From: Octopus sinensis
Taxonomy: Eukaryota
Assembly: GCF_006345805.1 (NCBI RefSeq)
Contig: NC_042999.1
Location: forward strand, 70,804,001 to 70,868,000
Direction of reading: 5' to 3'
DNA length: 64,000 bases
Positions within the stretch are counted from its first letter, which is position 1. The number at the start of each line of letters is the position of its first letter. Positions 5,776-48,393 of the stretch are shown here, piece by piece. The position numbers and the translations under genes were made by a program. Under the pieces are notes generated by a model. That model saw only the letters and a list, made by a program, of their open reading frames with translations, made no database searches and was not told the DNA's origin.

Positions 5776-7001
5776 AAGTGGGGTACACAATGATGTGATT
5801 TATTATATACTCGATTAATTACAGTTTTCTTTTTCGTTACTGATTTTCTAGTCCCTTGTCAACAGTTATGTTGTTGTCCTGTGATCAAAAGTGTAACTAA
5901 TTTGCCTTTTTTTTTATATATCACATTGTCCAGCGTATCCTTCTTTAATACATTAGGTTGTGATTTGGTGAACTTTGGCTACCATTTTTAACAGAGTGAT
6001 TGCATAAAAGCTATCTTGGAGTGCCACTTGTTTTTTTTCTTCTTTTTTTTCTCATTTTCTCTCTTCACAAACTAGAGGGTTTGAAGCTAGATGAATTGTT
6101 GCAGATTCCAATTGTTGGTATTCTGAATTCTTTATACTTCAACTTAAATTTGAATAATAAAATGTTAACTGAAAGGAGTATTGGTCAGTTAGTGAATGGC
6201 TGGTGGTTCATATTCTGCTGCTGCACTGTGTTCATGGTTAAAGCAACTTTTCTATCTAGCAGAAAGTGAATATTCACCGTAAGATAACATTTATTGATAG
6301 TGTCAGCATTGTGAAATTGATGTTTTATTACTTTGCATGTCTGTCTAAAGTTGTTTATGTGAGAATAGTTTTCAGATGGGTATCTTCACTATCAAATTCA
6401 TTCACTCTAGATGTGCATTGTGAAGGCAAAATGGTTTCAGTTGTGCCTAAGGAAACTGTTTTAAAACTTGTCAGATTCTCAGCCTTAGCTCAAATGTGTG
6501 TGTATTTATCCAAATATTTTACCCAACTATTTTATAAATTTCCTCATAACCTAGATTATCAGAAAGCTTTGTTGAATTATACTCTTAGTTGTCTACATGT
6601 TTGTTTCTTGAATTTAAGTCTTAATTTTTAATCTGTTAGGTGAACAGTCTCATTAAATAAACTTTATTATTTTCCCCCTATTTGTGTAATTATAATAATA
6701 ATAATAGTAATTTTATTTTTCTAGAACTCTTTCACATAAAAAAATGTATGTAGAATTAATATATTTTTTGTTCTTATTTCACAGTAAAAACACAAATGAT
6801 TTTATGTGCAAGCATACAATTATAGCACATTTATGTGTTTGTATGTTGGCAATTATAAAACTGTATTTGATTATGCTTTTTTTAAATAAACAATTAGCAA
6901 TTTTACCTAATGTTAGCTTTTTCACCTAATGTACAGCATTTTCTTGCTCTTCTCATTTGGTGATTTGTATTCCTACTGGACTCTTTTCTTTTTCTGTCCA
7001 G

Positions 7002-7155
7002 AAATGAAGGAAGAATACGAGGATTGTACAAAGGATTTCCAGTCTACATGGTTCATGTCACTCCCAACATATGCATCGTTTTACTAGTTTACGAGTACAT
7101 CACTTCACTTCATCAGGCGAACCATTCAGTGAAATCAGACCAATGGAAAACTTGA
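7002..7155 (+). CDS. SLC25A32: Terminal coding exon A of a mitochondrial carrier, variant H6 of SLC25A32 type: (R)NEGRIRGLYKGFPVYMVHVTPNICIVLLVYEYITSLHQANHSVKSDQWKT*
   Basis: Strong acceptor ctcttttctttttctgtccAG (AG at 7000-7001), phase 2; carrier motif EG..GLYKG followed by a hydrophobic helix VTPNICIVLLVYE; TGA at 7153-7155; aligns residue for residue with exon B apart from one inserted residue. Too short for the supplied ORF track. Confidence 0.8.
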
Positions 7156-9849
7156 AACGGTAACAAGGTCTGTGTTAAAAACAAACAATAAATAGATTGA
7201 AAAAAAAAAAAAGAAAGAAAAAAAGGGAAAAAATAAAGCAAAGAAAGAAAGCAAACATTCACTGGTCCTTCAGATGCTGCCCTTCTCAAAACATTGAAAT
7301 TAACCTGTCTGAAAGGGCATAGTTGACCTATTTTATTAACCTAGTTTTGACAAATATCATTACTAAAAGTCATTTATGTCATTTTCATTAATTTTGTCTT
7401 TCACATTTAATATTTTGTTTCACATTATTATTATTATTATTATTATTATTACTACTACTACTACTAATCATCATTATTTATATTAATAAAAAAGAAAGAA
7501 TTGCATGTATTTCTTTTCTTTTTTTTTTTCGGTTAAAGCTCCTCTTCATGCTCTTAAACCAATGACCTTTTCAGATGAATCATTAGATGAACATTTTTCG
7601 ATATATTCCTGAAGGGTGGGGGTGGGATACATAGCTATCTCCAATAGCTAAATATCATTAATTGTACTTTTAACTGCAACATTTCCTCTAAAAGGTACTG
7701 CTATCCCCCAAACACAAAGTTAATAATATTAATAATAATGATTATAGCGGTAATAGCAATAATAACGGTGATAATGATAGCAATGAGAATATTAATAACA
7801 ATGCTGATGACTCTATTAGGTAAATTCCTTTAGTTTTATTGAAAAAATAAATTGCTGATAATAATAATGATAATAATAATAATAATATTTGCAAACTATC
7901 ACCTGAGCATGAGGTTTTACTCTCTTTGCTTCTGCATCTTTCAAGGTCTTGGCTGATATTTATTTCTTCTCACACAGTAAGATTTCTTGCTTAACTTTGT
8001 TTCTTTTTTTTTTAATGTTCGTAAACTTTTATCACATCAGAATAACCTCCTTTTCCAGTTCCTTCATATCGCATTAAAAAATCTTACTGAAAGTAAAATA
8101 AAATATAGCATGATTTGAGCTGGATGGAATGGAAAGAAGTGTCATTCAAAAAACAAAGAAAACCCACATGAATTTAATTTCATTATTGTTAGAGTTCATT
8201 TTATTTATGTATATTTATCATAGGATATATTATGATTTTAGTAGTTGTCAAATTTGATATCATAACCAACTCATTCATTTCACTACCCCACTCACCTTGT
8301 AGTTATATTTTATTTGTTTAAACTCAATATATTTATGACTATTAGTTTCACCAATAATTCTTGCTTTTAAGCAATAATAAACCCGTGCCTTTATAAGGTG
8401 TGTAGTTTCTGCTACGTAGTTGAATATCTAATATGTTATAGACTTTGGTAATCCTTTTCTTTTAACTGTTTCTTTTTAAAGAATTTATCAGTGTTTTGTT
8501 TCAATGTATCTGCGACTTTTCTTAGCCATTCCACCATATTATTACCCATTAACAATGACAATACTGTAAGCTATGAAACTGGTTTGTGGTTCACCGAAAT
8601 CTATGTAGGGTTTTATGAAGTAGTTGTACTTATCAGAAATGTATATTTTAAAAAATTGAAGTGTTTGTGTATGTTAGACTATGTACATGCATTCTACTGA
8701 TGATGTTTTAATAAGGTTTCGAGTGGGCAAAAGCCAAGTTATTGAAGGCTTGATGTTCAGTATATTCATTGATCTCAGACTTTTGAGGGAAGAAAATGAA
8801 AATATGACATTGATGATTGTTTTATGAATAAAAATGTGTTATTTTCTGCCACTTGTGTGAAGTAGGAATAATAGCAATTCTTTTATATATGTGCAATGCT
8901 TTAAATTGTCAAGAAGGAGCAAAACTACTTCATGCTTGGTGCCTCAGAGAGAAGACAGACAATAATATTCTCACACACAACTGGTTGTTAAAGGGGAAAT
9001 GCTTTGTTAATTACATCAAGTACAATATATTGATGGTACTTGTTTAATAAACCTTGGAAGGATGACAAGCAAAGCTAGACTTTGCCGTGATTTGAAGATA
9101 TAAAATGAAGTACTGTAAAACATTGAATCAAGCGCTATATTGTGCTAATCATTTACCTTTGTTAATATTGGAATTTAGAAGTGAATATATAGATTTGTGG
9201 AGTTGGAATCAGTAAAGCACATGTCTTCTGTTCTCAGTTAAAATCTTTTTACTGGTACTTGTTTACCAGTAATACGCTAATTAATTATGCTCTTTCTTTA
9301 CCAAAATTAACCTTGTTCCCAATCAAATAAACCTATAATATAATTACAATGAGAACTGTAGAGTTAATAAACAGGTTAGTTAAAATTAAAGTGACTAGTG
9401 TGATTACAAACAAGAATTAGATGTGAGATAACTCCACTTATTTACTAATTTTCTATGGGAAAAGTATGAATGTCATATATTTCATTCTCTCTTTATAAAT
9501 CTGAGGCACCATAATGTCATTATTAATAATGACAATAATGTGATTATTTCTTTATTTTTTAATTAGCCCTGAAGATAATTGTTATTGTCTGGGTTTTGAA
9601 ATCTTGACACTAATAATTTTGTTTTAACTTTTGAATGGAAGTAGCTTTATAAAAATATTCTTTTAAAAATGTTCACAGGCCTGATTATGTGGTTAAGAAG
9701 TTTGTTCTGCAACCATGTAGTACTAGGTTTTGCTACACTAGGTTTTCTGCCATAGTCTTGGTTTGATCTGTACCTTGTAAGTGGAATTTGCTAGATATAA
9801 ATTGTGTTTAGAGCATATTGTGTGTGTGTGTGTTTATATAGCTTACCCA

Positions 9850-10080
9850 TATTATATTGGTGAAGGAGTAAACATCAGCAAAAACTGGTGCTATTCAAAT
9901 GAAGTCTTTCCCACCCAGATAATAGATGCTCTCCTCTTCCACTCTGTCTTCTCTCATTGTCAGAAATGTAATGAAGCAGTCATTAACCATTGGAAACCAG
10001 TAACCAACAACATCATTATTCACAAACAAACGAATAAAAGTTACCAAGCAATTGGTGAGTTATTGGAATTTAAAAAGAAA
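9850..10080. mobile_element. Possible Tc1-like transposase fragment
   Basis: Translation IIIHKQTNKSYQAIGELLE resembles a Tc1 N-terminal HTH; degenerate, no TIRs seen. Confidence 0.3.
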
Positions 10081-13000
10081 ATAAAAGCCAAAAAGAACTA
10101 CAGACAGTTTTACTGGTTGGCACTAGAAAGAACCCTTTTAAATGTATAAAAGCATGCAGGGTGTAGTGTTTAAGATCATAATTTTATTGATAGCAACTTC
10201 AGTTTTGCTCATTTTTTTTGTGTCTTGTTAGAAATAAGGTGAGTTAGGATTGATGAACATGTCATTATTTAATTTGGGAATGTTGCTTTACTTCATACTT
10301 TGAACAAGCTACAATTTGGGGAGCTTATCCATCCCGCTTCTTTGTCAGATGGGGATGACTTGACTCTGATTTCCACTTGCTTAGTGTTTAATATAATGTT
10401 TCTTTTCTCTTATTTTTTGTTGTCATATTTTGCATTTAAAGTGGGATATTGTTTGTATTGTTTTTCATCCTTTGACCTTCAGGAGTTTTTCAATATTTTA
10501 AAATATATATAAATTTTCGGCAACATTTTCTAAACATTAATGCAGAAAAGACTCACAGGTTACATGTTGATTAAACACCTTTAACTCAGTGCTTCTTTAT
10601 GGTATTGTTTGTAGTTGGTTAGTTTGTTTATATAAATGTTAGGGTTGATATTTTGCCATCTATGTCTTGTGTACTAAACCTTACAGAAATTGTATATACA
10701 TATCTCTCTCTCACACATGCATGTGTGTACACATACACACGAATATATCCATTTTCATAAAACAAGAAGCTCTGAGTAATGTCAGTCTAAACAAATTTTG
10801 CATGTATTGGATGAGATATCTTCCAACTATGTGTGTGTGTACCTGTATCGTTTTCTGAATAAAGGTAATGTATGTCTTAGGTGTATAAGTGAATCCAAAT
10901 AACAAATCCATTTGTGACATAAATCTTATTTCTATGATGGCCAGCTGAAAATGGGTACATATATGTTGTATGTACTGTATTTCAATTTTATGGCTTTGAT
11001 TTTTTTTGAGACAGCTTGCTCTGTCTTTAGCACCAAGACTTTCTCTTGATTGTGTATGTGAATATATGTATGATGCATACATACACACGCGTTTAGTTTG
11101 GATAGAATCTGTACTTTAAAAACTTTGTAGATTTTATGCTGCTGGTGGCAATAATAACAGTGGGATTTGAAATCAAGGAACTTTATTCTTTTGTTTTGTG
11201 ATATTTATTTTCAAATGTACATATAGCACTGTATATTCAATACTCTTCAAAAGTTATTTCAACACAAGTTTTTCTTTTTTTCATTTTCACACAATTTTTT
11301 AAAGAAATTTGTCTATTTTAGAGTTTCTGTATTGTTTGTATTTTATTTCATTTTGCTATAGTAGTTTGTTAAACATTTACAACTAGTAATTTTGGTTATT
11401 TTAATGCACTTTTGTCTTATTGGTATTTATTGCTAATAGATCTAACTAATCTTTGGAAACAAATGGTTAACAAGTGAAATCAAGAAGCAAATGTAGCTTG
11501 CAAATTTAATTAATCAATTAACTTAATGTTGTTTGCATCATATAAACTGACAAAAATTATGGAGTTAGAAACAGTTGTCATCAGCTGTATATAACCAGTC
11601 TGTTCCTGATTCCAATTTGTAGTCACTTCATTCCTTATATGATTAATATATTAGGGAAAGGGATGCACTTTTGCTTATCCTAAATCTCTTTGCTTATGCA
11701 TATGTGTTAAAAAAAGTTTTACAAAATATAATTCCATAACATATATTTAATAATTTCTTGGGAATTTTTTGTAGTCTGAGAAATCATGGAATTTAATAAT
11801 TACAAATATTAAGAAATATGGTACAGATATTTTTGAGAATGACAATTATGTTTTTAGTTTCATTCCATTTTCTCTACAAATCTGATGCCTTATGTTTTTA
11901 TAGAAAATCATCTGGAGAATTGGTTTGACAATTTTGGCCAGTCATGTCTTTGTGAATGGTAACTGTGGCAGCGTTCTTTGCAAATTGCTTTTTCAAAATA
12001 TGGTTTTAAAGTGTATACAGGTACATTTAAAGATTTATTGTCAATGCTAGTCAATATATAAAGTATGATGATTTGCCAGCTCCAGTCATTCCTCAATTTT
12101 GACTACTTTGGCATATTTAACACTCATAACATCACTTCTATCTTATCTTAGAAGAAAAGTTTTTGTCTTTATTGTATCATAACATTATGATGTAATATTT
12201 TATAGTCTATAAAATAGGTTCACTAAGGTGAGTTGAAAGAGTACTTTACAAATTTGTAGTGTTGTGTACAAATCTTACAATAGATCTAGCTTGGAGAGAG
12301 ATGGACCTTTTCATACTTGATTTTAGGCTTTTAACATGAAGTTTTCAGTAGTGTATTAATGACTCAAATGATTATGGTTATGGGATGTATGTATTCAAGT
12401 TCACTTATTCTTGCCAAACGTAACACAGTAAAAACAAAACATTATTTTGAATTTGGATAGTTTTTCTTTGTATGGTTTGTTACCTTAAAATTAAACTCTA
12501 TGCAACCAACATGTTCAAGCACTGCATGAGTCTGGAGAAATTTGGGGAACTTATTCCAGATCTTTATGCAGGCTTCATATTTAGTGTCACAATTATCCGT
12601 CAGGGATCATCTTGTTTTAAATTTTAATATATTATCACCAGACTCTGTTCTAATCCTCTCTCTGTTTTGGCTGCAATATTTATCAAGCCAGGAACTTCTC
12701 CAAATAGTTATCCAAAATTAGTTTTGATAATATAATTTAGAACAATAATCACTTTGAAATACAACCCAGAATCTTTCATAGCTGTAGAGTTGTTATTTTT
12801 TAAAAAATTACTTTCCTGATGTCATTTTACTTTAGGATCTACTTCACTGGTGTAGAAAACACTTCAACTTTATATCATTCATAAGATCAGTGTTATTATC
12901 CTAGAATGCATTCATATACAAAATTTTGAAACTAAGAAAAATGTCGCTATTTGATTAGGGACCAATGCAGTGCAAATGGTAGGGAAACATTAGTTGTACT

Positions 13001-14529
13001 GCTTGTGTGTGTGTTGCATATATCTAATTGCGAGTTTCATTCTTTATTTTGTTGTATCTGCAATGATATGAAATCCAAAATTCAGCATGCCGTATTTACT
13101 GATGAGTAAATACAAACATGTACACACTGTTATATGAATGCAGACTTAGACTTATACATTATACCCCTAAAATTTGATAACATTGAAGAACATTTCTTGC
13201 AGATACAGTTTTGTGTCATTATAGTGAAATTTATAGGGGAAACAAAAAAAGGAGACGAGATCTAATTTATGTCCTATTTATGTTGTACAGTCTTGCTAAT
13301 TAGGTTTGTTGCCCACTTAATTTCTAACCAGTGTTCTTTGGGCATTTAAAAATTTTTCTCATAAATTTCTTTCTCTTAAAATGTTTGCACCATTTGTATT
13401 GGAATTCATGTGGAGTATTTTTGTTTCAAAATTTAGTAGCAAAATGTGTAACTCTCAATTAAAAAAAAAACAAAAAAAAAACAGCAAAAAAAGCAAAAAC
13501 AAATTAAAACAAAATCAGTTAAAAATATCTTATTTATACTTTAAGAATAATATATGGATTTTAATTGTATGTATTGCAGAGGATTAGTGAGGTTATATCA
13601 TTTTAATTTATTTTTATTGTCAAATTGATAAAACAGATGTTTTTATTAATTATAGTTGTATGTAAAATTATTAAATAGGAAAACTTAAAAAAAAAAAAAA
13701 TAATTATGTTTAACAATATATTGGAATTCAACAATGAAACAAAAGCCAAGATAAAAGCAACAATGACACACACAACATATACATGATAATTCAATTTCTT
13801 TTTGATAATTTTTATTTATTGAAATATCAATTTTATCTGTTTTTTTTCCCTGCAATTTTCAATAATGAAAGCATCTCAGTGTTATTAAAATTTGAAATTG
13901 GAGTTTGTATTTGAATTGAAACTCCTATCTTTCATTTATTGTAAGTTTGTTCAAAGAATGATATTTCAACAGAAACAGAATAACACTGTTACTAAGAATC
14001 AGTGGCAGTAATTAAAAAAATAAAATGAGAATGGAGAAAAAAGAAGGAAGAAAAATAAACCTCAACAAAAAAACAAAACAACAGTACTTTATATTTTAGA
14101 TGACTGTTACAGGGTTGGCTCCTGGTGAGTCAAGATTACCACCCTGTCTTGATACTTGATAATAAAAGCCATTTTAAATTTACTGTTGCTTTTGGACAAG
14201 GCATGTGCATCAGGATATCCCTAATATCTCTTTTGTATACATTTCTTCTTCTTTTTTCCCCATTCTACCTTGTGTAATCAAGCAATTAAATTGTGAATTA
14301 TTTATTCTTGTTTTGCACCCAACTTTTGTCCAATGTGGCAGGTATGAAGAGAATTTGGTAAATCCCGGTACATATCATAAATAGCATGAAATTATATTTT
14401 TTATTTTTTTTTTGCATGTCTTTATATTACCATTATCCCTTTCCCCTCCCAAATTTCCTCACCATTTCTGATATATAAATCTGTCAAGTACATTACTGAA
14501 AATAACCACCTGAAAAACTAAAAAAAAAA

Positions 14530-14720
14530 AAAAACTGACAACAGTGACAGAATTGGGTAAAACATAGGACAAAAAGTCCTGCAGTATTTAAGTAGATCTC
14601 TTTGCATCTGAAACTCAAACCCTGTCAAGTTTGATTTTGCTTTCCATTTTTCTGGCATTGATACAAGTACCAGTTGGGTACTGGAGTTGATTTGACTGTA
14701 CCCTCTCTCCAAATGTGTGG
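14530..14720 (-). mobile_element. SINE family 1 fragment
   Basis: gatacaagtaccagttg...ggccttgtgcctatgatag core and a gagtttcagatgc head remnant; diverged, with mixed orientation of pieces. Confidence 0.5.
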
Positions 14721-14944
14721 CCTTGTGCCTATGATAGTAATAAAAATTATTATTAAAAAAGGGCAGTAGACTAGCAGAAACAGTAGTACTAGACTATGTA
14801 AATACCTCACAGTTTTTAGTTATATTGTATGTTCTGTGTTCAGTTACTGCCAGTTTGTACCAGTCATATTCATGATTTGATTCAGTCAGCTACAAACCTT
14901 TCTTGTGCCAACACCAGAGATTCATATTATTAGAAAAGTGCTAG

Positions 14945-15150
14945 AACTGGTAGATCATCAGCTAAATATCTTTGCATGTCTAGTTCCATCCCTGTTTTGA
15001 GTTCAGATCCTTCTGATGTTGACTTTGTATATCACCCTTTCACAGTCAATAAATAAAGTGCTATCTGGCATGCAGAAGAGTTGATTCATTTGACAATACT
15101 CCTCCAGTGAAACTGTGGTCTTGTGCCAATCTGTGGAATTCATATATCAT
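14945..15150 (+). mobile_element. SINE family 1 copy
   Basis: gagttcagatcc head, gttgactttg...aataaa core, ggtcttgtgccaatc end, (att)n tail. Confidence 0.6.
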
Positions 15151-16571
15151 TATTATTACTCAATATTTAGTAGTGACTTGATAGAATTAAGATGACGACA
15201 ATACAATACACAGAGAACATAACGTAAAATGATTTCTAACTCAAGACATCTATTTTGCATTTGTTACTATAATTTGGTTTTTTAATGTACTAGGATGTAT
15301 TTGATTGAATATACTCTGATCTTTCCATTATTTCTTGATTTTCCTTTCTATCTTTCATTATCTCTCATCATAATTTTCAATATTCATGACTACTATATAC
15401 ATGTATAAAATTTTTCCAGTATACATGTATAAAATTTTATCTTTGGATTTTGTGTACACAACTGTTTGTGTTCTGTTTGAGAGATACTTTTGTGTCCGAA
15501 TAATTTTATGTTGAACGTAAATATAGAAATTCCAACATGGCACATTTTAAAGTTCTCTCCCTACCATCCCTGCTATTCTCACTCTTGTACTCAAATGATT
15601 TTTATTTCTTACAATTCTACAGGCCTTTATAACAGTAATAATTAAAAACAAGCTGCAATACCCCAGTAGACAAAAAACAAACAAAAAACCCCCCAAAAAA
15701 TAACATGCCCACCCCCATAAAAGAAAATATAAATTACACTTTTTAAAAAAAAATTATTCAGAACTATGTGATTTGGTGCTTATTTTAACTCTGACCATAA
15801 CCTATGTTCAAAACAAATGTATAAAAGCAAAATTCTATGTGGACATAAATAAAAGCCCAACAAAACTAAAATTTATTTTCTCTATTAACAAATAGTAGAT
15901 TATGTTTCTAGCTGTTTCTTTCTTTTTATTTTTCAAGTTACAACTTTTTGTATATTTTTCTTTTAACGCTTTCCTTTCTTATTTGGCTTTTTTTTCTTTT
16001 AATGCTTTTTCTATTATAATTTATTATTGTAATTGGCACTGAGGTTTAAGTTGTAAGATGTTTGACTTTGGTGCTTTGTTAGCTTCTCTAATCAACCAAG
16101 TACCATTTCACATCATTGGGTGGTGGACTCAGAAATATGACTTTCTCTACTTAGACAAATGAGTGATGTTTTGTCAGAGAGACTATTTTTGGCAGGTGCC
16201 AGAGTATTGTTACAAGATCTTCAGGTCTTCATTCCATACCTTGGTTTTGATTTCCATTTGTATGTAATCTAATTTGTTAATGACCTTGGGAAAGGCATGA
16301 ACATCACATTTTATCATTTTCTATTCATTATTGCCCATGCCTAATTTGGAAAAAAAAAAAATTAATTTTTTCTTTCTAATTATGTGGAGGTCATTTTATA
16401 ATTGTTGTAGCACTTATTTCTTTTCTTTTCACATTCCTTTGAGGCCATTAATTTACTTTTTGAAACAAACATGCCTGCACACATACATATACAACATATA
16501 TACAACATATATACTTACATACAAACATACATACACCGATTCACACATATTTATATGGACATAAAGACATA

Positions 16572-16618
<47 letters not shown>

Positions 16619-18051
16619 TGCCAACTTTTTAATCCACTGAAAGACAGTAGTGGCAACATCTATCTTTCTCACTTGACTTCTGTGAAGGACAAGCTAATAA
16701 TAATGATAATGTATTGATACTTTTGTATATCCCATGCCAAGTATTCCACTTGGAATTCTTGAAGAAATTAAACAAAAGGACATTTTTTTTTGTTTTTTTT
16801 TTTGAGTGTATGTGGTATATATTTTGCATACCTTGTTGAATGAATCTTAAATAAAAAAAATTACAAATGCTTTATTGAATTGTTTTTTTCCTTACATAAA
16901 TTGTTTTTGTTTTTCTATTTTTTTTACAGTAAAGTACACATAAATGTAATGCTGTATGAAATTTAAGCAATGAATTTATAGTGACTGGGCAGGAACGAAT
17001 TGAATTATGATTTGCTGGATTATATTGACTGTAAAATTGAGGTGTTTGATTATTCCTCATATTGTCATGAGTTCGAGCATTACTAAGAATCATGTTGAAT
17101 TCTTGAATGTGATAACTTAGTGTGTTTCTGGTTCCCTGATGGGTAAAACCAAATTCTGATTCTATTTGATAGTTGAGTTATTATCAACTGGATGTATATC
17201 CTATTGTAAAAATAAGTGGTCCAATTAAAGCTCTTCCCTCTTCCAGTAGTATGGAAAATATTGGGCAAAATGGATGTAGAGAATTAATAACAGGCCCTGC
17301 CATCTAATGACATAGTTATTGCTTCCAATATTTTTCACCTTGAGTTCTTTTCATTACCACAGTTTCCATAGAACCAAGATTTGCTACTCTGCGTTATGCT
17401 TGTGATCTTCAACTTTTCAGAATGCTACTGAAAACAATATTGTTGCCTTGAAATCCACAAAACCTTTAATAATATTTGACACAATTACTTCTCGCTAAGT
17501 CTTGCATTTGTGGGTTCCACCCATCTCTGGTAGTTTACTTAGAAAATTTCTTATCAAGCTATTCTATCACACATTTCGTAATTCTCTCAATCCACATTCT
17601 ATTAACATTAGTGTTGCTCAGTTATACTTCTCATGCCCCTTTCCTACACATTGACCTACTTCCAATTAAATACTGGTAATGTAAAGGCCCTCATCTTTAC
17701 ATATTCACTCATCTACATAAGACAATCTTTATGCAATTCATGGAAATTTTATTCTTCCTACAGTGTTAAACAGTAACTACACATGTGAGGAACTAACCAT
17801 ACTGCATCTTTACATATGAATAGCTATTCACAACTAAAACATTAAAAAACTATATGAATGCTAACTCTCACAATATATATAAAATTCTCAAGAATATCAC
17901 ATATTTGTAACAAACTATGCCTCCTCAGAGACTAAATGTTCTCTTAAGATACAAGTGAACACCATATAGACTACTGCTAAGACATCTAAAGCAGAACAGT
18001 TGCTAAACAACTATTCTAGAATCCTTCTCCATCTCACTCTACCCTCTAAAG

Positions 18052-18380
18052 CAGCGTTCCTCAACCAGGGTTCACCAGAGCCTTATGGTTCTGCAAAAAG
18101 GTTCCTAGGGGTTCCCTTGAGAAAGAGATAAGCTAATGGTAATATTACCATACGTGCGCAACATATTAGTTATTGTAATATAGACATCATCCTGTCAAAC
18201 CTGTTATGTTATTAAAAAAATATGACAACCGTGTATATATATATATATATGATATTTACCACATGAATAATGAAAAAATATGAGAAAGATATGGTATATA
18301 ATATTTTTTGTACAGGGGTTCCTTGAGATATGTAATTTATTTTAAGGGTTATGCAGGGGTAAAAATGTTGAGAAACACTG
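18052..18380. mobile_element. hAT (Charlie-like) MITE
   Basis: TIRs CAGCGTTCCTCAACC and TGTTGAGAAACACTG; perfect 8-bp TSD CTCTAAAG at 18044-18051 and 18381-18388. Confidence 0.9.
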
Positions 18381-19559
18381 CTCTAAAGGCTATCCAACAG
18401 CAAATCACTCCCAGAAATGCTCTCAATACCTTACCTCTGTCTCTTCTATTATTATCTACAGCAATTCATTTGAATTTGCAAGTTGTTTTAATGTAATTAA
18501 CTTGCTACATTTTGTCATCCTATATGTCTTATCTTAATTCCCCCCAAACTGTTATCTTTACGCATGTTTTTTTTCTTGAGTTTCTTTCCTGGCCCTGTTC
18601 CCCCTGTCCTTTAAAGCTATCATTCTGTTCAAATTCAAACTGAGCCTTAACCATGATGTCTGGCAACAAGCTGAAAGAGAAGAGGGATTATTGGGCATAG
18701 CTGTTTGGACACTAACTTTGTTTTAGTGGTACTTTTTTTTTTTATTTGGCAGGCATTTTGATGCTAAAAGCAAATATGCAGTCACATGCATGGATACATG
18801 TAAACAGAGAGAGAAAGGGAGAGATTGAGATGTTACACATACAAAGAGAAACTTTAAAATTGATTGAGAAAATTGATACAGACACATCCTCTCTTCACAT
18901 AGACAAAAAGAAAAAGAAGTGCATGCACAGACAGACTGACAGACAGATGGCTTTGTTAAAATGGAATTATCTCATATATGAAAGCAATAAAAAGTGAAAG
19001 ATAATATTAAAAGCAAAAATGATTACAATGCTGATTTATTGAAAATCAGTTCTTCATTTGGTAATTACGAGCAATGCTCCTCCAGAAGTTGGTTATGTAG
19101 AACAGACAATATTTTCTTGGTATCAAAATGTTTAGGGACAAAATGTTCAATCTAAATAGATTCAATAACTGAATCAGCAAAGCTTAATGAACGGTGTCAG
19201 ATAAGCTACACGAAATCCCTAACCTGCTTGGAAAGGACTGCTAGAGTTATGGGTTTTATCACCTTCCTGGACTAAAATGTTTAAAAAAAAAACGAAAAGT
19301 TTGCTTTGATTGATCATCATCATCATGTCCATCTTTCTGTACTTACATGGGTCAAATAGAAATTGTTGAGGCAGATTTTTTATGGCTTGATACTCTTTCT
19401 GTTACCAATCTTCATGTTTCTAAGCAAGATATTTCCCCATGGTCAAAACCTCTTTTCACAGAAGTTTTGAAATGAATAACACTACTTGTATTATGGTGAT
19501 ACTTGTTCACAACTAATACTCAATATCAAGACAAAGAGATTAAAAAAAAAAAAATCCAA

Positions 19560-21050
19560 ATGTGTGCAGATGGATCATGGTACACTTGCACTTGGTGATT
19601 CTGGAAAGAAAGAGGTATAGAAGTGCTACTATAAAGCTTAGTAAATGTAGAGAATGTATGAGAGAAGAGAATTTTCCCAGCATGGACCCAACAGAGAAAC
19701 CAGCTTTCTTGTTGACAGTATTATGATAAAGCAGTTAAGGATATGATGGCAAAGAAAGCTCCTGGTCATCAGGAATCATTGCTGAAATGCTTAAAATATC
19801 TGGTGGTGTAGGATACGGAATAGTCACTCATATAATTAATCAGGTTGTACAGGGAAAGTGTTATACCTGATGACAGCATTATAGTCAACAGTTACAAGAG
19901 TAAAGGAGATGCCTTAGAAAAAAGTTATTAAAGAGGTATCCAATTGCTGGACCAGGTCATGAAGCTTACAGAATGAGTTATAGCCCAATTAATTAAGAAT
20001 AGGATGAGATGAGATGCAGTTTGGTTTTGTGCCTGTGAGGAATACTACTGATGTTGTCTTTCTGGTAAGACAACTGCAAGAAGAGTATTTAGCTAATCCA
20101 TTATACTTGGTATTTGTTGATGTGGAGAAAGCCTTTCACAGGATCCTTTACTCTGTGTGATCTGATGGTCTTTGAGCAAGCTAGGAGTAGACAGATAGCT
20201 TGTTAGAGACTTACAAGTCATGTCGTGTGGAGTTGTCAGTTGAGTAAGAGTTAACTACAAGTACAGTAACAAATTGAGTGTACAGGTAGGATTTCCAGGT
20301 CTGTAAGCAAAACTTGGAATCAAAGGGCCTTAAATTTAATTTAGCAAAAAACCAAAGTTCTAGTAAGCTGGAAAATACAGGACTCTTACTCCCTTCAGGG
20401 ATACATAGAGAAGGTGTAGGCAGAAATTCCATTAGATGTACCCACTGCAAGAAATGGACATACAAGAGGTGCAGTGAAATCACATGAAGGTTCATGGAAA
20501 CATAGATCTTGTAGCAAATGTACAGGGGCAATATACACTAAGAATGCATGGGGAATAGATTCTCATAAATAAGAAATAGTAGATGGTTTCTGTTATCTAG
20601 GTGACTAATTAGCAATGGAGGATGCTGTTCTGAAATTATAGTTGCTAGAATAAGAATTGGAGAGATACAGTTCAGCAAGTTATCATTTTTGTTTGTAATA
20701 AAAAGACTCTCCTTTAGAGGGAAGGGCACATGGTACAGTGCTTACGTACAAACAGCAATGCTACTTGGTAGAAAGACAGTGGCCTCGAATGCCGAGAATT
20801 TTTGAAGATTAGAAAGGAATGAAGCTATTATGCTCTGATGAATGTTACAACGTTAGTGTGCATGTACAAGAAAGTACAAGTGAGGTGAGAGAAAAGTAGG
20901 GCATAAAAAGACTCAAATGTAGTGTGCAAGAGAGAAGATTGCACTGGTATGATTAAGTGATGTGTATGGATGATGACAGCTGTGTAAAAAAGGACTGATC
21001 ATTTAAAGTAGATGGAATTTATAGAAGAAAGAAGACATGGTACAAAGTAA
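19560..21050 (+). mobile_element. Degenerate RTE-clade LINE (RT and C-terminal region)
   Basis: Remnant RT motifs such as LVFVDVEKAF and LIADFIIL-like blocks shared with the minus copy at 25960-27290; numerous stops. Confidence 0.75.
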
Positions 21051-21684
21051 TGAAGTCTGATCTCTCCATGCCACTAATGATGTCCAAGGGAAAGCCAAAG
21101 TCTGATACAGCTTGGCACCAGTGATGTCACACCTTATTTTTACAGCTGAGTGAACTGGAGCAATGTAAAATAAAGTGTCTTGCTTAAGAACACAGCACAT
21201 AACCTGATCCAGAAATTGAACACAACCTCGCAATCATAAGCCTGGTGCTCTAACCACTGAGTCATGCACCTATACAGTATATAGATTCATAATATAGATA
21301 CATGATCTAGGAACAGACTCAGTTCACTATATCTTTTATCTTATTTTATTACAATAAAACCATGGAGAGAGTAATGTAAGTACTTGGGAAAAAATGTTTG
21401 AATTTTCTGATTAGTGAAGTGTACATACAGTCAAAACAATACAACTGTTTTGAATTAAGATCCTGTTGGAATTGACTTTGTGTTTTCTCTTCTGTGGACA
21501 ATAAGGTAGAATATACAATCATGTTGGGTTCATCAACCATTCTTTTGCCCCTCTCTCTGCACAGTAATAGTTTTGGGCAGTAGATATTTCTGTATGAGGT
21601 ACATCTTTAGAGTAGATTTCTGTATTTGTTGATGTTGTTGTTTAGCACCAGGTCACAGTGAATTAAACAAACCTATGATCACCT

Positions 21685-21685
21685 A

Positions 21686-21725
<40 letters not shown>

Positions 21726-21785
21726 CCTATGCCTGCCTGCCTTCTGTCTGTCTGCCTGTCTGTCTGTTTGCTTCTACCTACCTGT
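21685..21785. repeat. (TCTG)n/(CCTG)n microsatellite
   Basis: Read directly. Confidence 0.9.
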
Positions 21786-21806
21786 CTTTACGTCTATCGT
21801 ATTTTA

Positions 21807-22243
21807 TATGCTTGATATAGATGTTATTTCTGTAAGGAAATCTAACAGCCACAAAGCCACAAAAAAACACTAACAGTCTGTTAAGTGTATGAATAATACA
21901 TACTTCTATGCAGCATCTTATATAATAACCTACTAAAGATGCTTACCATTTCTGAAGGTTGATTGTACTCTTATGGTGTTTCTCTTTAGTTGTTTAGGCA
22001 TGATCAACACTCTCTTGATAGATCTATAATTGAATGTATTTCAACCGTATCCATCCTGTCCTACTTTTAGGCATCATATCTTTGCAACAAGATTATATGG
22101 TGTCCCCCACACCCACTTTTTTAAAAAGATGATAGCATGTAATTTGAGTCAGATTTTTGGCTGTTATCTCTTGCAGATCCAGGGGCCCATTTGTTGGTTC
22201 CTTTGTAAATTATTCTAGTTGTATTTATGTTTGCTTGGATTCT
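21807..22243 (+). repeat. Local duplication, copy 1
   Basis: About 430 bp closely matching 24096-24508, e.g. gcttaccatttctgaaggttgattgtactcttatggtgtttctctttagttgtttaggcatgatcaacac is identical in both. Confidence 0.9.
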
Positions 22244-22467
22244 ATATATCTTAATTAAAATGATATATCTTTTTGTAGTCTTATTTTAATTAAGATATTA
22301 CCTAGTTGTTGATACATCTTTTTTCTGTTCACACCCACCCAAATGTGGGTACCCCTGTCTCACACATGCATGCATGTATGGACAAGAGTATCTTTGTGTG
22401 TATGTGTGTGTGTGTATATTTGTTCCATGTCCTCGGGTTGTTGTGTTTTTTTTTGCACTTTCTTGTT

Positions 22468-22578
<111 letters not shown>

Positions 22579-24095
22579 CATACATGTATATACATTTGTA
22601 TGTGTATTCATTTTTTTTAATTTTAAGAGTTTACTGTTGTTCTGTTTTTTTAAGTGTGTTATAACTGAATAGGTAGTTATCAGATAGGGCCTCAACAAAA
22701 TTTTGAAAGCATTTTTTTGTTCTTTTTCAAAATCTGTAAGAGAAGGAAGTGATGAAGACTTAGCAGGAACATGTTGGGTGAAAAAACCAAATGTAAATAC
22801 ATCATGCATCACCACCACCACCACTCCCGCCGCCGTTGTTGTCATTGTCGTCATCAATAGTTTAATGATGCCATTTACTTGTATTTATGAATGCATATGT
22901 GTGTGTGTGTGTGTGTCTGTTTTGCATTTATGCATATGTGTATGTGTATAAGTACAGTCATCCCTAGGTTTAAATTGTAGGTTAATTCTGTGACTCACTG
23001 TACACATTGAAAATGCATAAATAGTAAATAGTAGGGGGTAGGCTTCAAATTCTATTATCAATGACCTTCCATCATGCATTTAAAATTGTTTTTTTTAATT
23101 TTACAAATTACTACTGAAATTATCTTCACACAGTCTTTTATCTTTTGTCTTTTACATGTTTCAGTCATTAGACTGTAGACATACTGGGGCATCACCTTAG
23201 AGAATTTTTTAGCCTAATGAATTGACCTCAGTACTTTTTAAAAGCCTGGTACTTATTCTATCAGTCTCTTTTTATTTTGATGTTGGTGTTGACGTACTTG
23301 ACTCAATAGGTCTCCTCAAGAACAGCGGGTCACTCTACGATCCAAGGTTAGCACAGCAGGCTGGCCTGCGAGCCATGAACTCACTTCATTTGTCAGGTCT
23401 TCACAGTCACAGCATATCTCAGACGTCTCAGTCTTTGTCATTTCCTCTGTGAGGCCCAACGTATTTTTAATATAACTGTTTATCATAATTTTGTTTCAAA
23501 ATTACAAATTATACCTTCATCTAATATTTGGTTAAATGGTATGATAATGACTAGCAAGAACAGAACTTGAACATAAAGGTTGTACTAAATGGCAGGGATG
23601 TGAAAGAATGTTATCAGTTAGTAATAAAATTTGAAGACAATATTATTTTCCATTGTATATAATTCAACTTCAGGAAATAAGTTTTTTTTTTAGACCAGTT
23701 TTCAAATAATGTAGCAGTTATTCTGAATTTTTCATTTACATACCAATGAATTGGGAAGGTATTTTTACTCAGCTATCTCAGACCAAGTATTAAAAGTACT
23801 CTACTGTAAGTAGGTACGTCTGTCACTGGGTTTGCAGTTCAGCTAATTGGATGGAAAACAAAAAATAAGCACAATTGTGTGTGTATGAGTGTATATTTAT
23901 ATATTTATACATGTTCTTGTGTGTGTGTGTGTGTGTATATATATATGTATATAATACACACACACGTGTAGATGATATATGTATGTGAGTGTATGTGTGT
24001 GTGTGTGTATAAGTGTATATGATAAATTATTTTTATTCCTAGTGTACTTTTGTCGGTTGTCTCATATCATTTTTATCTAATTTGTGGCTGTTCTA

Positions 24096-24508
24096 TGTGC
24101 TTGATGCATATGTTATTTCTGTAAGGAAATCTAACAGCCACAAAAACACTAACAGTCTGTTAAGTGTATGAATAATACATACTTTTAAGCAGCTCTTATA
24201 TAACAACCTACTAAAGGTGCTTACCATTTCTGAAGGTTGATTGTACTCTTATGGTGTTTCTCTTTAGTTGTTTAGGCATGATCAACACTCACTTGATAGA
24301 TCTATAATTGAATGTATTTCAACCGTATCCATCCTGTCCTACATTCAGGCATCATGTATTTGCAACTAGATAATATGCTTCCTCCCTTTTTTTTAAAGAT
24401 GGTAACATTTAATTTGACTTTTGGCTGCTATTTCTTGCAGGTCTCAAGGCCTTACTTATTGGTGGTTTTGTTTATTATTCTGACTGTATTCATGTTTGCT
24501 TGGAAACC
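24096..24508 (+). repeat. Local duplication, copy 2
   Basis: Direct copy of 21807-22243. Confidence 0.9.
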
Positions 24509-24659
24509 TGTTTTTTTTTTTTCAATTAAATTATGTCCTGCTGTTAATGTGCCTTGTTTCTATCCATATACATCTGGGTGCATAAATATATGTGTATTGG
24601 TCTGCTTGTTTTTTTTATATAGATATTTATGTGTGAATATGTGTGTTTGTGAGTGTGTA

Positions 24660-24726
<67 letters not shown>

Positions 24727-24728
<2 letters not shown>

Positions 24729-24935
24729 CTCTCTCTTTCGGAGAGGCACTGAGCAGCTATACGCACATATACACACACGGCAGTAACTTCCACCTACCGA
24801 ATTCAATCACAAAGCTCCTGTCGGCTCGGGGCTATAGTGAAAGACACCTACCCAAAGTGCCACGCAGTGGGACTGAACCCCAAACCATGTAGCTAGGAAG
24901 CAAGCTCCCTAACCACACAGCCATGCCCGCGCCTA
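24727..24935 (-). mobile_element. tRNA-derived SINE, family 2
   Basis: Reverse complement has the head aggcgcgggcatggctgtgtggttagggagcttgc and ggttcagtcccactgcg, as in the copies at 55647 and 60462. Confidence 0.8.
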
Positions 24936-25168
24936 CATATATATATATATTATATGGTCCAGAAAAGAACAAAAAAAAAAACATGAAGATGCGGTGAAAG
25001 AACAACAATCAGAGTGTATTTAGTTTATACTCAGGAAAAATAGAAGTTTTTAATGTTTCAAATTTACGCTCTTCTTCGGAAAGGATAGATGAGGAGAGGA
25101 AAAAAATAGAGAGAAAAATAACATGATTGAATAAAACACACACACACAACACATGCATGCACACACAT

Positions 25169-25201
<33 letters not shown>

Positions 25202-25959
25202 TAATGGCCTTCTTCCATGCTGGCATGGGTTGGATGGTTTGACAAGAGCTAGCAAGCCAGAGACCAGCATCAGGCTCCATTGTCTGCTTTGGTATGGTCT
25301 CTATGGCTGGATGTTCTAACACCAGCCACTTTATAGAGTATACTGGTTTTTATGTGCTTTTTACAAGGCACCAGCATTGGTGCTTTTTACATGGCACCAA
25401 CACCAGTTAGGTCACCAAGTAACTTGCGAGATGAAGACCTCTCACCTAAGAGAGAGAGCGGAATCAAGGGAAGTGGTTTTGTGCCAGATGAGAGGTTAAA
25501 GTATTAGAGGGACAGAAATAGATTTCTTACTATAGAGGAGATACTTGACTACCACCGTCGGAAAAGAAAGAAGAGGAAAGAGAGAGTGAGAGAGAGAGAG
25601 AGAGGTTCAGAGTGAGAGAAGGAAATAAATAGTGTTGGAGATGCATTGGGTCCTATCAATAAGGAACAGTGGTGGGAGTATAAGTGGTACAGAATGGGAT
25701 GCTCTCTGAGAATGTGAGGGGAGATGTTTAGAGATAAAGAATTGATGAGTATAGCAAATTGTGAGAGAAATTGGAGTGGCTGGGATGGGGAGTATAGTAG
25801 ATATGTGGGGGCATGGAGAGTGTATAGATAGGCACATGAGGGGCTTACCACTGGTGGTTATCATGGGTGGAGAGAAGCTGGGTTGTTTGGGAGTTTTGAC
25901 TGAGGACAAATCATGTATATGTGTATGTGAGTGGGGCATGGCTGTAAAGGACATGCCTG

Positions 25960-27290: not shown

Positions 27291-27409
27291 GGATAGAAAC
27301 AAAGAAAGCTTTGAAAGTATCTTTTGAGTTTATTCTTTTTTCAAAACTCACTTTGAACATAAATTTATTCAATAACATCTATTTGTAAACAACCCCTCAG
27401 ACACACACA

Positions 27410-27457
<48 letters not shown>

Positions 27458-27552
27458 TAGAAATGGTAAGACAACAAAAGAATGAAAGAGACCTCGATAT
27501 GTAAATAGAGGAATTTATCTGTAAATGTAATATGTGACAATCATTCGGTAGC

Positions 27553-29232: not shown

Positions 29233-29384
29233 ATTTGTATAAGAAACAGTGTACCTTTCAGTGCAGGCTCTGGATTCCATAAAAAATCTGTAGAGATAAA
29301 CTTAAAAATGCAACATTGCACTGCTAACACAAAAGTAAGACACAGTACTGACTTGTAAGCTTTTAATATACTTGGTAGTATATT

Positions 29385-30447: not shown

Positions 30448-30486
<39 letters not shown>

Positions 30487-31700: not shown

Positions 31701-31735
<35 letters not shown>

Positions 31736-32681: not shown

Positions 32682-32728
<47 letters not shown>

Positions 32729-34623: not shown

Positions 34624-34656
<33 letters not shown>

Positions 34657-48362: not shown

Positions 48363-48393
<31 letters not shown>

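What the first reader, a model, noticed from the sequence alone, without database searches (positions are those of the whole stretch)
7045..7095. Arg-to-His change at carrier contact point III, plus covarying H6 changes, in exon A
Seen: [14 protein letters not shown] in exon B aligns to VYMVHVTPNICIVL in exon A, with R>H (CAT at 7054-7056), N>Y, A>N and T>V, while VTP and VYE are kept. Known: in the common substrate-binding-site model of mitochondrial carriers, contact point III is a conserved Arg on H6 (human SLC25A32 R288 by my count from the recalled sequence) that binds anionic substrate groups. Inference: isoform A has altered or pH-dependent substrate binding (folate versus FAD versus another solute) or acts as a regulatory form.
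Basis: partly seen in the sequence, partly recalled or inferred. Interest (0 to 1): 0.75.

Follow-up and report, generated by a model that had tools for sequence, protein, structure and literature searches.

The report
Ancient His-type last exon of SLC25A32
The octopus mitochondrial folate/FAD carrier gene has two alternative last exons. The flagged one replaces a binding-site arginine with histidine; it is an old, strongly conserved, expressed form shared by molluscs, annelids and arthropods, present in automatic annotations but, in my searches, undescribed.

Summary
Window 7002-7155 (+) is an intact exon encoding the loop and helix 6 of a mitochondrial carrier, with CAT (His) at 7054-7056. 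Its paralogue at 38703-38916 has CGA (Arg) at the matching position.

The window is the 3' end of Octopus sinensis SLC25A32. Exon A is the exact end of RefSeq isoform X2 (365 aa) and exon B of isoform X1 (385 aa).

The His lies 7 residues after the GxYKG motif, the register of Arg279 in bovine ADP/ATP carrier and Arg287 in TtAac, which is contact point III.

The change is not an octopus peculiarity:
- The His-type end (Y-x-x-H-V-T-P-N-I-C) is near-invariant in 125 distinct sequences.
- It pairs with an Arg-type isoform in abalone, oyster, zebra mussel and a bee.
- It sits upstream of the Arg-type exon in limpet genomic DNA.
- It is the only form at a beetle locus.
- Cuttlefish-like transcripts show it as a 221-nt cassette with its own stop.
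- dN/dS is 0.03-0.24.

Exon A is therefore a functional, ancient alternative helix 6 with a re-lined cavity face (Y/H/N/V versus N/R/A/T). Altered substrate handling is plausible but untested. A merely regulatory or inactive form is unlikely.

The parts
6961..7001 (+). Pyrimidine-rich tract and AG acceptor (7000-7001) of exon A
   Evidence...CTCTTTTCTTTTTCTGTCCAG|AAATGAAGG. The exon begins with one base plus a codon, as in exon B and both limpet exons.
7002..7155 (+). Exon A coding part, the His-type end of SLC25A32. It encodes the end of the matrix loop, helix 6 and a short tail (50 codons plus stop TGA at 7153-7155).
   Evidence: Exact match to the C-terminus of O. sinensis isoform X2 (XP_029633992.1 / XP_036356974.1) and O. 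vulgaris CAI9719493.1. Pfam Mito_carr 19 bits, below the 22.3 cut-off. dN/dS against decapodiform-like cephalopods is 0.09-0.24 for the whole exon and 0.03-0.06 for the helical core.
7045..7047 (+). Tyr codon at position -3 from contact point III (Asn in the Arg-type)
   Evidence: Tyr in 121 of 125 distinct His-type segments; Asn in 29 of 45 Arg-type segments.
7054..7056 (+). CAT, His333 of isoform X2, in the register of contact point III on helix 6
   Evidence: His in all 86 His-type full-length proteins found with a whole-protein query. In the AlphaFold2 model of a cephalopod isoform A the equivalent His351 lies in helix 345-371, where the 10-residue block means of pLDDT are 93-96.
7066..7080 (+). 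Asn (+4), Ile (+5), Cys (+6), Ile (+7) and Val (+8): the type-specific N-I-C-I-V stretch
   Evidence: Asn 122/125, Ile 113/125 and Val 114/125 in the His-type, against Ala 38/45, Cys/Thr and Thr 42/45 in the Arg-type. Jensen-Shannon divergence is 0.84-0.99 at +4, +5 and +8.
7160..7173 (+). Two candidate 5' splice sites just after the stop (ACG|GTAACA at 7160, AAG|GTCTGT at 7168). Inferred, not verified with octopus RNA.
   Evidence: Rough consensus scoring. By analogy, the cuttlefish-like transcript L001 splices exon A to exon B from a donor 70 nt after the stop.
7187..7237 (+). Two AATAAA signals (7187-7192 and 7232-7237) in an A-rich stretch. Candidate poly(A) sites that would make exon A a terminal exon. 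Inferred.
   Evidence: By analogy, ten RNA-seq contigs of a related cephalopod run through the exon A donor and end in an A-run after AATAAA.
7156..38702 (+). About 31.5 kb between exon A and exon B. It is intron when A is spliced to B, and part of a longer intron when A is skipped.
   Evidence: No other carrier exon was found in the window by tblastn. The CDS range of the O. vulgaris orthologue is about 104 kb.
38703..38916 (+). Exon B coding part, the Arg-type end of SLC25A32 (70 codons plus stop at 38914-38916). Arg CGA is at 38752-38754.
   Evidence: Exact match to O. sinensis isoform X1 XP_029633991.1. Pfam Mito_carr 39.2 bits. The tail is modelled as a long helix continuing H6.

Best explanation
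Exon A is the His-type alternative last coding exon of the Octopus sinensis SLC25A32 gene (mitochondrial folate/FAD carrier).

Shown:
- Exon A and the Arg-type exon B are tandem paralogues in the same intron phase, 31.5 kb apart, downstream of a gene body that lies outside the window.
- Using A gives the 365-aa isoform and skipping it gives the 385-aa isoform. The two share helices 1-5 and differ only in helix 6 and the tail.
- In related cephalopods, exon A is a 221-nt cassette that carries its own stop, so exon B becomes 3'UTR. Alternatively it is a terminal exon through read-through of its donor and nearby polyadenylation.
- The pair is old. His-type and Arg-type isoforms with identical bodies occur in gastropods, bivalves and a bee, and the A-then-B order is seen in limpet DNA and in fused gene models of a copepod, an ant and a wasp.
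- The His-type is under strong purifying selection and is the only form at a beetle locus.

Inferred:
- The switch re-lines one face of helix 6 at and around contact point III, from Asn/Arg/Ala/Thr to Tyr/His/Asn/Val.
- In this protein contact points I and II are Gly and Gly-Val, so the Arg is the only formally charged contact-point residue. Isoform A therefore has a less cationic, more aromatic and polar site with a titratable His.
- The most likely consequence is a different substrate preference or transport mode within the flavin/folate/nucleotide-cofactor range, not loss of function.
For: Sequence and identity:
- Sequence and phase.
- Only two carrier exons in the window.
- Exact identity to RefSeq O. 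sinensis X2 (exon A) and X1 (exon B).

Splicing in related cephalopods:
- L001 equals L014 plus a 221-nt insert. The flanks are 99.5-100% identical and the junctions are GGAG|AAATGAAGG and CCTAAAAT|GTATGAAGG.
- Ten RNA-seq contigs carry a full 383-aa isoform A reading frame that ends at exon A.

Selection and conservation:
- dN/dS for exon A is 0.03-0.24 with dS 0.5-2.2.
- Between O. sinensis and O. bimaculoides, exon A differs at 1 of 50 residues and exon B at 11 of 70.
- A profile-free search with exon A found 80 hits, nearly all ...Y.xHV.PNIC....
- A whole-protein search gave 86 His-type, 24 Arg-type and 4 fused A+B models.
- Same-body isoform pairs in Haliotis, Dreissena, Ostrea and Ceratina.
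- Limpet genomic DNA has the penultimate exon, then the His exon, then the Arg exon 2.5 kb on. Each has its own stop and the same phase.
- The beetle has the His-type only, with no Arg-type exon within 10 kb.

Binding-site mapping:
- Type-specific positions -3, 0, +4, +5 and +8. Helical moment 0.44, pointing 52 degrees from the His, permutation p about 0.03.
- Contact points I = G133 and II = G236-V237.
- AlphaFold2 gives a canonical six-helix carrier for isoform A, with H6 block means of pLDDT 93-96 and TM-score 0.84 to human UCP1.
Against: - No functional data exist for either isoform in any species. As of 2022 there was no direct transport assay for SLC25A32 or FLX1 (PMC9311062).
- Octopus expression of exon A rests on RefSeq model proteins. 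I found no octopus transcript contig. The donor and poly(A) sites in the window are inferred only.
- I could not read model coordinates, so 'faces the cavity' rests on homology register and helical periodicity.
- The periodicity test is modest (p about 0.03) and partly circular, because position 0 defines the classes and +4 was used in one filter.
- Some lineages manage with one type only: the beetle with His, and vertebrates with Arg (the latter from my own knowledge). This is also what one would expect if both types carry the same substrates.
Confidence: 0.65

Rival explanations
1. Both isoforms transport the same substrates. In this reading the exon choice serves regulation: tissue or stage expression, different 3'UTRs, mRNA stability, or the long charged helical tail that only octopus exon B has. 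The H6 differences would then be neutral-then-frozen or only fine-tune kinetics.
For: - The beetle locus carries only the His type, and vertebrate proteins in the hit list carry only the Arg type. Either type alone can therefore apparently suffice.
- Including exon A changes the 3'UTR, because exon B becomes untranslated.
- The exon B tail is modelled as a long extra helix that A lacks.
Against: - The class-specific residues are near-invariant within each class over very deep divergence. They sit at and around a mechanistically central position on one helix face, not in the tails.
- The tails themselves are poorly conserved.
- The pair has been kept in molluscs, a copepod and Hymenoptera, which argues for non-redundant proteins.
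Confidence: 0.25
2. Exon A is a decaying duplicate or a 'poison' cassette. Its only role would be to introduce a premature stop and send the mRNA to nonsense-mediated decay, with no functional protein made.
For: In the cuttlefish-like transcript the exon A stop lies 70 nt upstream of the last exon junction. Under the vertebrate 50-55-nt rule (my own knowledge) this could trigger decay.
Against: - dN/dS is 0.03-0.24 with saturated synonymous sites.
- The protein signature is near-invariant across phyla.
- It is the sole form in a beetle and the commonest annotated end in insects.
- In another cephalopod the transcripts end at exon A with no downstream junction.
- In the octopus the candidate donors lie only 4-12 nt after the stop.
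- AlphaFold2 models it as a confident helix 6.
Confidence: 0.03
3. Exon A is the last exon of a separate upstream paralogous gene, not an alternative exon of the gene that ends in exon B.
For: The body of the gene lies outside the window, so the window alone cannot show which upstream exons join to A or to B.
Against: - No other carrier exon lies between A and B or upstream of A in the window.
- The RefSeq octopus isoforms share an identical body up to ...VIEKTWR.
- The cuttlefish-like transcripts L001 and L014 are 99.5-100% identical outside the 221-nt insert.
- In the limpet, a single penultimate exon is followed by A and then B.
Confidence: 0.02

Closest known systems
Human SLC25A32 (mitochondrial folate transporter / FAD carrier, MFT/FLXC)
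   Same: It is the orthologue. The window's exon B end (...[25 protein letters not shown]) is nearly the vertebrate end (...[10 protein letters not shown]...). The body has three Mito_carr repeats. The gene is named accordingly in RefSeq for Octopus. Its substrate is disputed between folate and FAD/FMN (PMC9311062, PMC12410006, PMC10526428).
   Different: To my knowledge only the Arg-type end is described for human, and R288 comes from a recalled sequence. The octopus gene adds a second, His-type helix 6 by alternative exon use.
SLC25A3 (phosphate carrier) exons 3A/3B
   Same: A mitochondrial-carrier gene with tandem-duplicated exons used alternatively, giving isoforms that differ in a transmembrane segment. 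This is established knowledge; the SLC25A3 mutually exclusive exons appear in PMC5740500 and PMC10027655 (found), though I did not read the details.
   Different: Those are internal, strictly mutually exclusive exons near the N-terminus and are vertebrate-centred. Here the duplicated unit is the last coding exon (helix 6). Exon A carries its own stop and behaves as a cassette or composite terminal exon, and the swap changes a contact-point residue.
Contact point III arginine of the ADP/ATP carrier (TtAac R287; bovine AAC1 R279) and UCP1 (R277)
   Same: Same register on helix 6, 7 residues after the [FY][FY]KG motif. In TtAac it binds substrate phosphates and acts as a hinge, and R287A abolishes transport (PMC7611774, PMC11529707).
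   Different: Isoform A has His there, against the rule 'nearly always positively charged'. It also has Tyr at -3, where the Arg-type and AAC have Asn.
Insect, annelid and mollusc SLC25A32 orthologues with the His-type end (for example Ceratitis capitata W8BHA3, Aethina tumida, Capitella teleta, Haliotis rufescens X1)
   Same: They share the Y-x-x-H-V-[TLM]-P-N-[IV]-C-x-V signature found in window exon A.
   Different: In the beetle the His-type helix 6 is fused into one exon with the rest of repeat 3 and no Arg-type exon follows. The octopus keeps both.

Membership tests
Mitochondrial carrier family (SLC25, Pfam PF00153) | Three tandem repeats of about 100 residues, each matching Mito_carr | tested here: met
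   O. sinensis isoform X2 (P0225, which ends in window exon A) gives Mito_carr E 4.5e-61 with 3 stretches. Only the last half-repeat is inside the window.
Mitochondrial carrier family (SLC25, Pfam PF00153) | Six-helix bundle fold | tested here: met
   The AlphaFold2 models of cephalopod isoform A (mean pLDDT 81.3, pTM 0.76) and O. vulgaris isoform B (81.4, 0.75) each show six long helices plus three short matrix helices. For the isoform A model, Foldseek gives TM-score 0.84 to human UCP1 and 0.74 to bovine AAC.
Mitochondrial carrier family (SLC25, Pfam PF00153) | Px[DE]xx[KR] signature on odd helices | tested here: inconclusive
   P0225 has PLDLVKIR (canonical), PVFVAKTR (Phe in the acidic position) and PYQVVRSR (Gln in the acidic position). 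The atypical second and third motifs resemble what I recall for vertebrate SLC25A32, but I did not test that.
SLC25A32 orthologue group (folate/FAD carrier) | Closest named relatives are SLC25A32 / mitochondrial folate transporter proteins, and the window exons match such a protein exactly | tested here: met
   Exon A is exact in XP_029633992.1 and exon B in XP_029633991.1, both named 'mitochondrial folate transporter/carrier' of O. sinensis. Every named hit in the 120 proteins listed is either SLC25A32/folate carrier or an uninformative 'hypothetical'/'unnamed protein' label; none bears another family's name. The names are automatic annotations.
SLC25A32 orthologue group (folate/FAD carrier) | Transports folates and/or flavin nucleotides | not testable with these tools
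   Needs transport or complementation assays. Even for human SLC25A32, direct transport data were lacking in 2022 (PMC9311062).
Common substrate-binding site of carriers (contact points I-III) | Contact point III on H6 is a positively charged residue (Arg/Lys) | tested here: not met
   Exon A has His (CAT 7054-7056) in the contact-point register, while exon B has Arg (CGA 38752-38754). His is conserved in 124-125 distinct His-type segments. The rule is quoted from PMC7611774 and PMC12410006.
Common substrate-binding site of carriers (contact points I-III) | The residue lines the central cavity | not testable with these tools
   Only the homology register and helix periodicity are available.
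Alternative splicing by tandem exon duplication (as in SLC25A3 3A/3B) | Adjacent paralogous exons with the same intron phase | tested here: met
   Both exons start with one base plus a codon after AG. The same holds in limpet DNA. In the gapped alignment of exons A and B (48 aligned codon pairs), 19 residues are identical and both exons hit Mito_carr.
Alternative splicing by tandem exon duplication (as in SLC25A3 3A/3B) | Transcripts with either exon and an identical rest | tested here: met
   The cuttlefish-like contigs L001 (with A) and L014 (without A) are 99.5-100% identical outside the 221-nt insert. For octopus itself there are only RefSeq model isoforms.
Alternative splicing by tandem exon duplication (as in SLC25A3 3A/3B) | Strictly mutually exclusive internal exons, never both in one mRNA | tested here: not met
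   L001 contains exon A followed by exon B. Exclusivity holds only at the protein level, through the stop codon in A.

The most novel reading that the evidence does not exclude
The His/Arg exon pair divides the two disputed activities of SLC25A32 between two proteins made from one gene. One helix 6 would be tuned for flavin nucleotides and the other for reduced folates, or one would act as an exchanger and the other as a proton-linked or uniport mode using the titratable His. The pair would date back at least to the protostome ancestor. Lineages that kept a single type would then either have a broadened carrier or use another route for the second cofactor.
Probability: 0.15. Interest if true: 0.8.

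Novelty: new variant of a known kind. Interest (0 to 1): 0.5.

Why it matters
What SLC25A32 actually transports, folate or FAD/FMN or both, is still unsettled. Reviews from 2022 to 2025 list it as uncertain, and one notes that no direct transport assay existed (PMC9311062, PMC10526428, PMC12410006).

Contact point III is described as almost always cationic and as a hinge of the transport mechanism. A natural, ancient, strongly conserved swap of that residue and its helix face, inside an otherwise identical protein, gives a ready-made pair of proteins for comparison:
- It shows that a His at this position is compatible with a working carrier, because it is the only form in a beetle.
- It points to four or five residues (Tyr -3, His 0, Asn +4, Ile +5, Val +8) as the ones to mutate.
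- It warns that results from Arg-type vertebrate SLC25A32 may not transfer to the insect orthologues, which are His-type in the species listed here.

It is also a clear example of tandem exon duplication kept as alternative splicing at least since the protostome ancestor.

Tried and rejected
- The word-index homologue search with the 50-aa exon A found nothing. This was a false negative of the index, because P0010 shares a 27-residue identical run with the query.
- Exact-product look-ups found nothing for the window ORFs over exon A and exon B, for Ceratina X3 or for O. sinensis X2. I therefore have no octopus transcript contig.
- The O. vulgaris gene range is about 104 kb, too long for DNA to be returned. 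I could not see the upstream exons or compare flanking introns.
- phmmer against PDB aligned repeats 1-2 of the query onto repeats 2-3 of UCP1, so it was useless for mapping H6. There is no SLC25A32 structure in the PDB copy. I mapped the register by the GxYKG / P(+3) / YE(+12,+13) anchors instead.
- The ungapped 'core33' A-versus-B dN/dS values are invalid, because exon A has one extra loop codon that puts the slices out of register. I use only the gapped A-B figures (dN 0.66, dS saturated).
- The literature searches found no description of a His-type SLC25A32 end or of this exon pair: SLC25A32+CG8026 gave 0 papers, and I also tried CG8026 alone, SLC25A32+splicing, folate-transporter mutagenesis, contact point III, SLC25A3 exons and SLC25A32+Drosophila. 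The intron-position study of carriers (PMC10027655) does not contain the phrases 'alternative splicing' or 'exon duplication'.
- Lawrence et al. 2011, on folate recognition by the transporter, is not held.
- The cluster look-up of unnamed His-type hits gave no deuterostome or cnidarian names. The duplication is therefore dated only to 'at least the protostome ancestor'.
- I considered and rejected a pseudo-exon, a separate paralogous gene, and a chimeric assembly of L001. The last would need a shared k-mer, assuming k = 31 (from memory), and only 5 bases are shared at the junction.

Full report
**What is in the window.** The window is AT-rich eukaryotic DNA, with GC about 0.28-0.40 over most of its length. 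At 7002-7155 on the + strand, after a pyrimidine tract and AG (7000-7001), an open frame reads NEGRIRGLYKGFPVYMVHVTPNICIVLLVYEYITSLHQANHSVKSDQWKT and then stops. A second segment at 38703-38916 reads [36 protein letters not shown]...KTE and stops, with Arg (CGA) at 38752-38754. Both exons begin with one base plus a codon, so they share the same intron phase. A tblastn with a recalled human SLC25A32 found no other carrier exon in the 64 kb, so the body of the gene lies upstream of position 1.

**Identity.** The exon B peptide retrieves only ...[10 protein letters not shown]... ends.
- A full-length cephalopod protein (P0010) recovered with the exon A peptide was used as a query. Among the results were the Octopus proteins called 'mitochondrial folate transporter/carrier'.
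- Cluster members show two isoforms in O. sinensis, O. vulgaris and O. bimaculoides, of 385 aa and 365 aa.
- Window exon A is identical to the end of O. sinensis X2 (XP_029633992.1 / XP_036356974.1) and of O. vulgaris CAI9719493.1. Window exon B is identical to O. sinensis X1 (XP_029633991.1) and differs by one residue from O. vulgaris.
- The window is therefore the 3' end of O. sinensis SLC25A32, or of a near-identical genome. Both isoforms already exist as predicted RefSeq proteins.
- The CDS of the O. vulgaris orthologue spans about 104 kb.

**Exon A is a real, selected coding exon.**
- A Logan contig (L001) from a cuttlefish-like species carries the SLC25A32 body spliced to an exon-A-type end with its own stop. 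After 70 nt it continues into exon B in another frame. The species assignment rests on its B-isoform protein clustering at 90% identity or more with Acanthosepion pharaonis SLC25A32.
- A second contig of the same species (L014) is 99.5-100% identical on both sides but lacks a 221-nt insert. The junctions are GGAG|AAATGAAGG......CCTAAAAT|GTATGAAGG and GGAG|GTATGAAGG. This is cassette inclusion versus skipping.
- In another cephalopod, ten RNA-seq samples each gave a contig with the complete 383-aa isoform A reading frame. There the transcript runs through that donor (AAAAT|GTATGG) and ends in an A-run after AATAAA, so exon A serves as a terminal exon.
- In the octopus window I see two candidate donors 4-12 nt after the stop and AATAAA at 7187 and 7232. 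These are inferred. I found no octopus transcript.
- dN/dS of exon A between octopus and the two other cephalopods is 0.09-0.24, and 0.03-0.06 for the 33-codon helical core, with dS 0.5-2.2. The exon B core gives 0.09.
- Between O. sinensis and O. bimaculoides, exon A differs at 1 of 50 residues and exon B at 11 of 70.

**It is not an octopus peculiarity.**
- A HMMER search of 1.84 billion representatives with the 50-aa exon A peptide returned 80 hits. Nearly all carry ...Y-[LM]-x-H-V-[TLM]-P-N-[IV]-C-x-V....
- Among the 120 best whole-protein hits, 86 full-length proteins are His-type, 24 are Arg-type, one has Lys, and four gene models contain a His-type segment followed by an Arg-type one: Lottia, a copepod, Trachymyrmex and Cotesia.
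- Isoform pairs with identical bodies and His or Arg ends are annotated in Haliotis species, Dreissena, Ostrea and the bee Ceratina.
- In Lottia genomic DNA the penultimate exon is followed by the His exon and, 2.5 kb later, by the Arg exon. Each has AG plus one base plus a codon and its own stop.
- His-type ends are the annotated form in many beetles, a cockroach, a stick insect, tephritid flies, a crayfish, a scorpion, mites and annelids. Arg-type ends appear in vertebrates, nemerteans, springtails and some wasps.
- At the Aethina tumida locus the whole third repeat is one exon, His-type, and no Arg-type exon lies within 10 kb downstream.
- The duplication therefore predates the split of lophotrochozoans and ecdysozoans. 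Lineages have since kept both types or lost one.

**Is the His at contact point III?**
- In all three repeats of the octopus protein a G-x-[YF]-[KQ]-G motif precedes the even helix. The residue 7 positions later is G133 (H2), G236 followed by V237 (H4), and H333 or R332 (H6).
- The same count (FFKG + 7) gives R279 in bovine AAC1 and R277 in UCP1. Those sequences are recalled from memory.
- Published reviews identify TtAac R287 as contact point III. [quoted passage not shown]
- Pro at +3 and Tyr-Glu at +12/+13 anchor the alignment without gaps.
- The Arg of isoform B is the only charged contact-point residue of this carrier, and isoform A replaces it with a titratable His.
- The Pfam profile registers the difference: exon A scores 19 bits, below the cut-off, and exon B scores 39 bits.

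**Covarying changes.**
- I compared 125 distinct His-type and 45 Arg-type helix-6 segments.

| Position | His-type | Arg-type |
|---|---|---|
| -3 | Tyr 121/125 | Asn 29/45 |
| 0 | His | Arg |
| +4 | Asn 122/125 | Ala 38/45 |
| +5 | Ile 113/125 | Cys or Thr |
| +8 | Val 114/125 | Thr 42/45 |

- V(+1), T(+2), P(+3), Y(+12) and E(+13) are shared by both types.
- A helical-moment test of the per-position divergence gives 0.44, pointing 52 degrees from the His, with permutation p about 0.03. The test is modest and partly circular.
- By pseudo-symmetry, position -3 corresponds to TtAac N85 on H2, a documented substrate-binding Asn (PMC11529707). That is an analogy, not a test.

**Structure.** The AlphaFold2 models of a cephalopod isoform A (P0010, 87-sequence His-type alignment) and of O. 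vulgaris isoform B (P0106, 24-sequence Arg-type alignment) are both confident six-helix carriers.
- In isoform A, H6 spans residues 345-371 and the 10-residue block means of pLDDT over it are 93-96.
- In isoform B, H6 continues into a long helical tail (326-375).
- The A model matches human UCP1 (TM-score 0.84) and the c-state ADP/ATP carrier (0.74).

**Interpretation.**
- Shown: an ancient pair of alternative last exons yields two carriers that differ only in helix 6 and the tail, and the His-type is functional enough to be the only form in a beetle.
- Inferred: the binding site of isoform A is less cationic and more aromatic and polar. This should change what binds or how transport is coupled. 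The flavin-versus-folate question is the obvious candidate, but nothing here tests it.
- The main rival is that both forms carry the same substrates and the switch serves regulation or kinetics. Single-type lineages fit that view. The invariance and cavity-face clustering of the class-specific residues speak against it.
- A decaying or purely 'poison' exon, and a separate gene, are effectively excluded.

**Novelty.** The isoforms exist in automatic annotation. In the held literature I found no mention of a His-type SLC25A32, of this exon pair, or of a His at contact point III in this subfamily. I rate it a new variant of a known kind: moderately interesting, directly testable, and relevant to an open question about the carrier's substrate.

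Noticed in passing
window 44133-45005 (+) and 50673-51107 (+): These ORFs look like reverse-transcriptase remnants of LINE-like retroelements. The first hits Pfam RVT_1 (E 3.3e-6, 27.4 bits, just under the cut-off). The second has a similar RT-tail motif but no Pfam hit.
   Followed up: partly
window about 48000-52700: Extremely AT-rich stretch (GC 0.15-0.27) made of long TA-rich microsatellite blocks, which give 'YIYIYI' ORFs on both strands.
   Followed up: no
window 56900-59100: GC-rich island (0.49-0.52) with several ORFs. The ORF at 58565-59059 hits Pfam DUF7047 (E 1.1e-20). It is probably another mobile element and not a host gene.
   Followed up: partly
window 38800-38913 (exon B tail): The Gln/Glu-rich tail of octopus exon B (SKFADRREQQEQLEAELEAALQLQEQ) is modelled as one long helix continuing helix 6. 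Exon A has no such tail, and the tail is not conserved in other phyla.
   Followed up: partly
L013 (Aethina tumida) 15776-16027: In this beetle the third carrier repeat is a single exon with a His-type helix 6. The intron in front of helix 6 is gone, and no Arg-type exon lies within 10 kb downstream.
   Followed up: yes
proteins P0131 and P0168 (Babylonia areolata): In this whelk the His-type and Arg-type proteins sit on different contigs, so the two forms may have become separate genes there.
   Followed up: no
proteins P0022, P0084, P0156: Rare variants. P0022 has Tyr in place of the His (YLIYVTPNICIV). P0084 has His with Asn kept at -3 (PNLLHVLPNVCIV). P0156 has Lys in an otherwise Arg-type end. 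These may be intermediates or errors.
   Followed up: no
window 7003-7035 versus 38704-38733: Exon A has one extra residue in the loop before helix 6 (NEGRIRGLYKG versus [10 protein letters not shown]). The extra residue is also present in the other cephalopod exon A sequences.
   Followed up: partly
(tool behaviour): The word-index protein search missed P0010 although it shares a 27-residue identical run with the 50-aa query. Negative results with short queries in that tool should not be trusted.
   Followed up: yes
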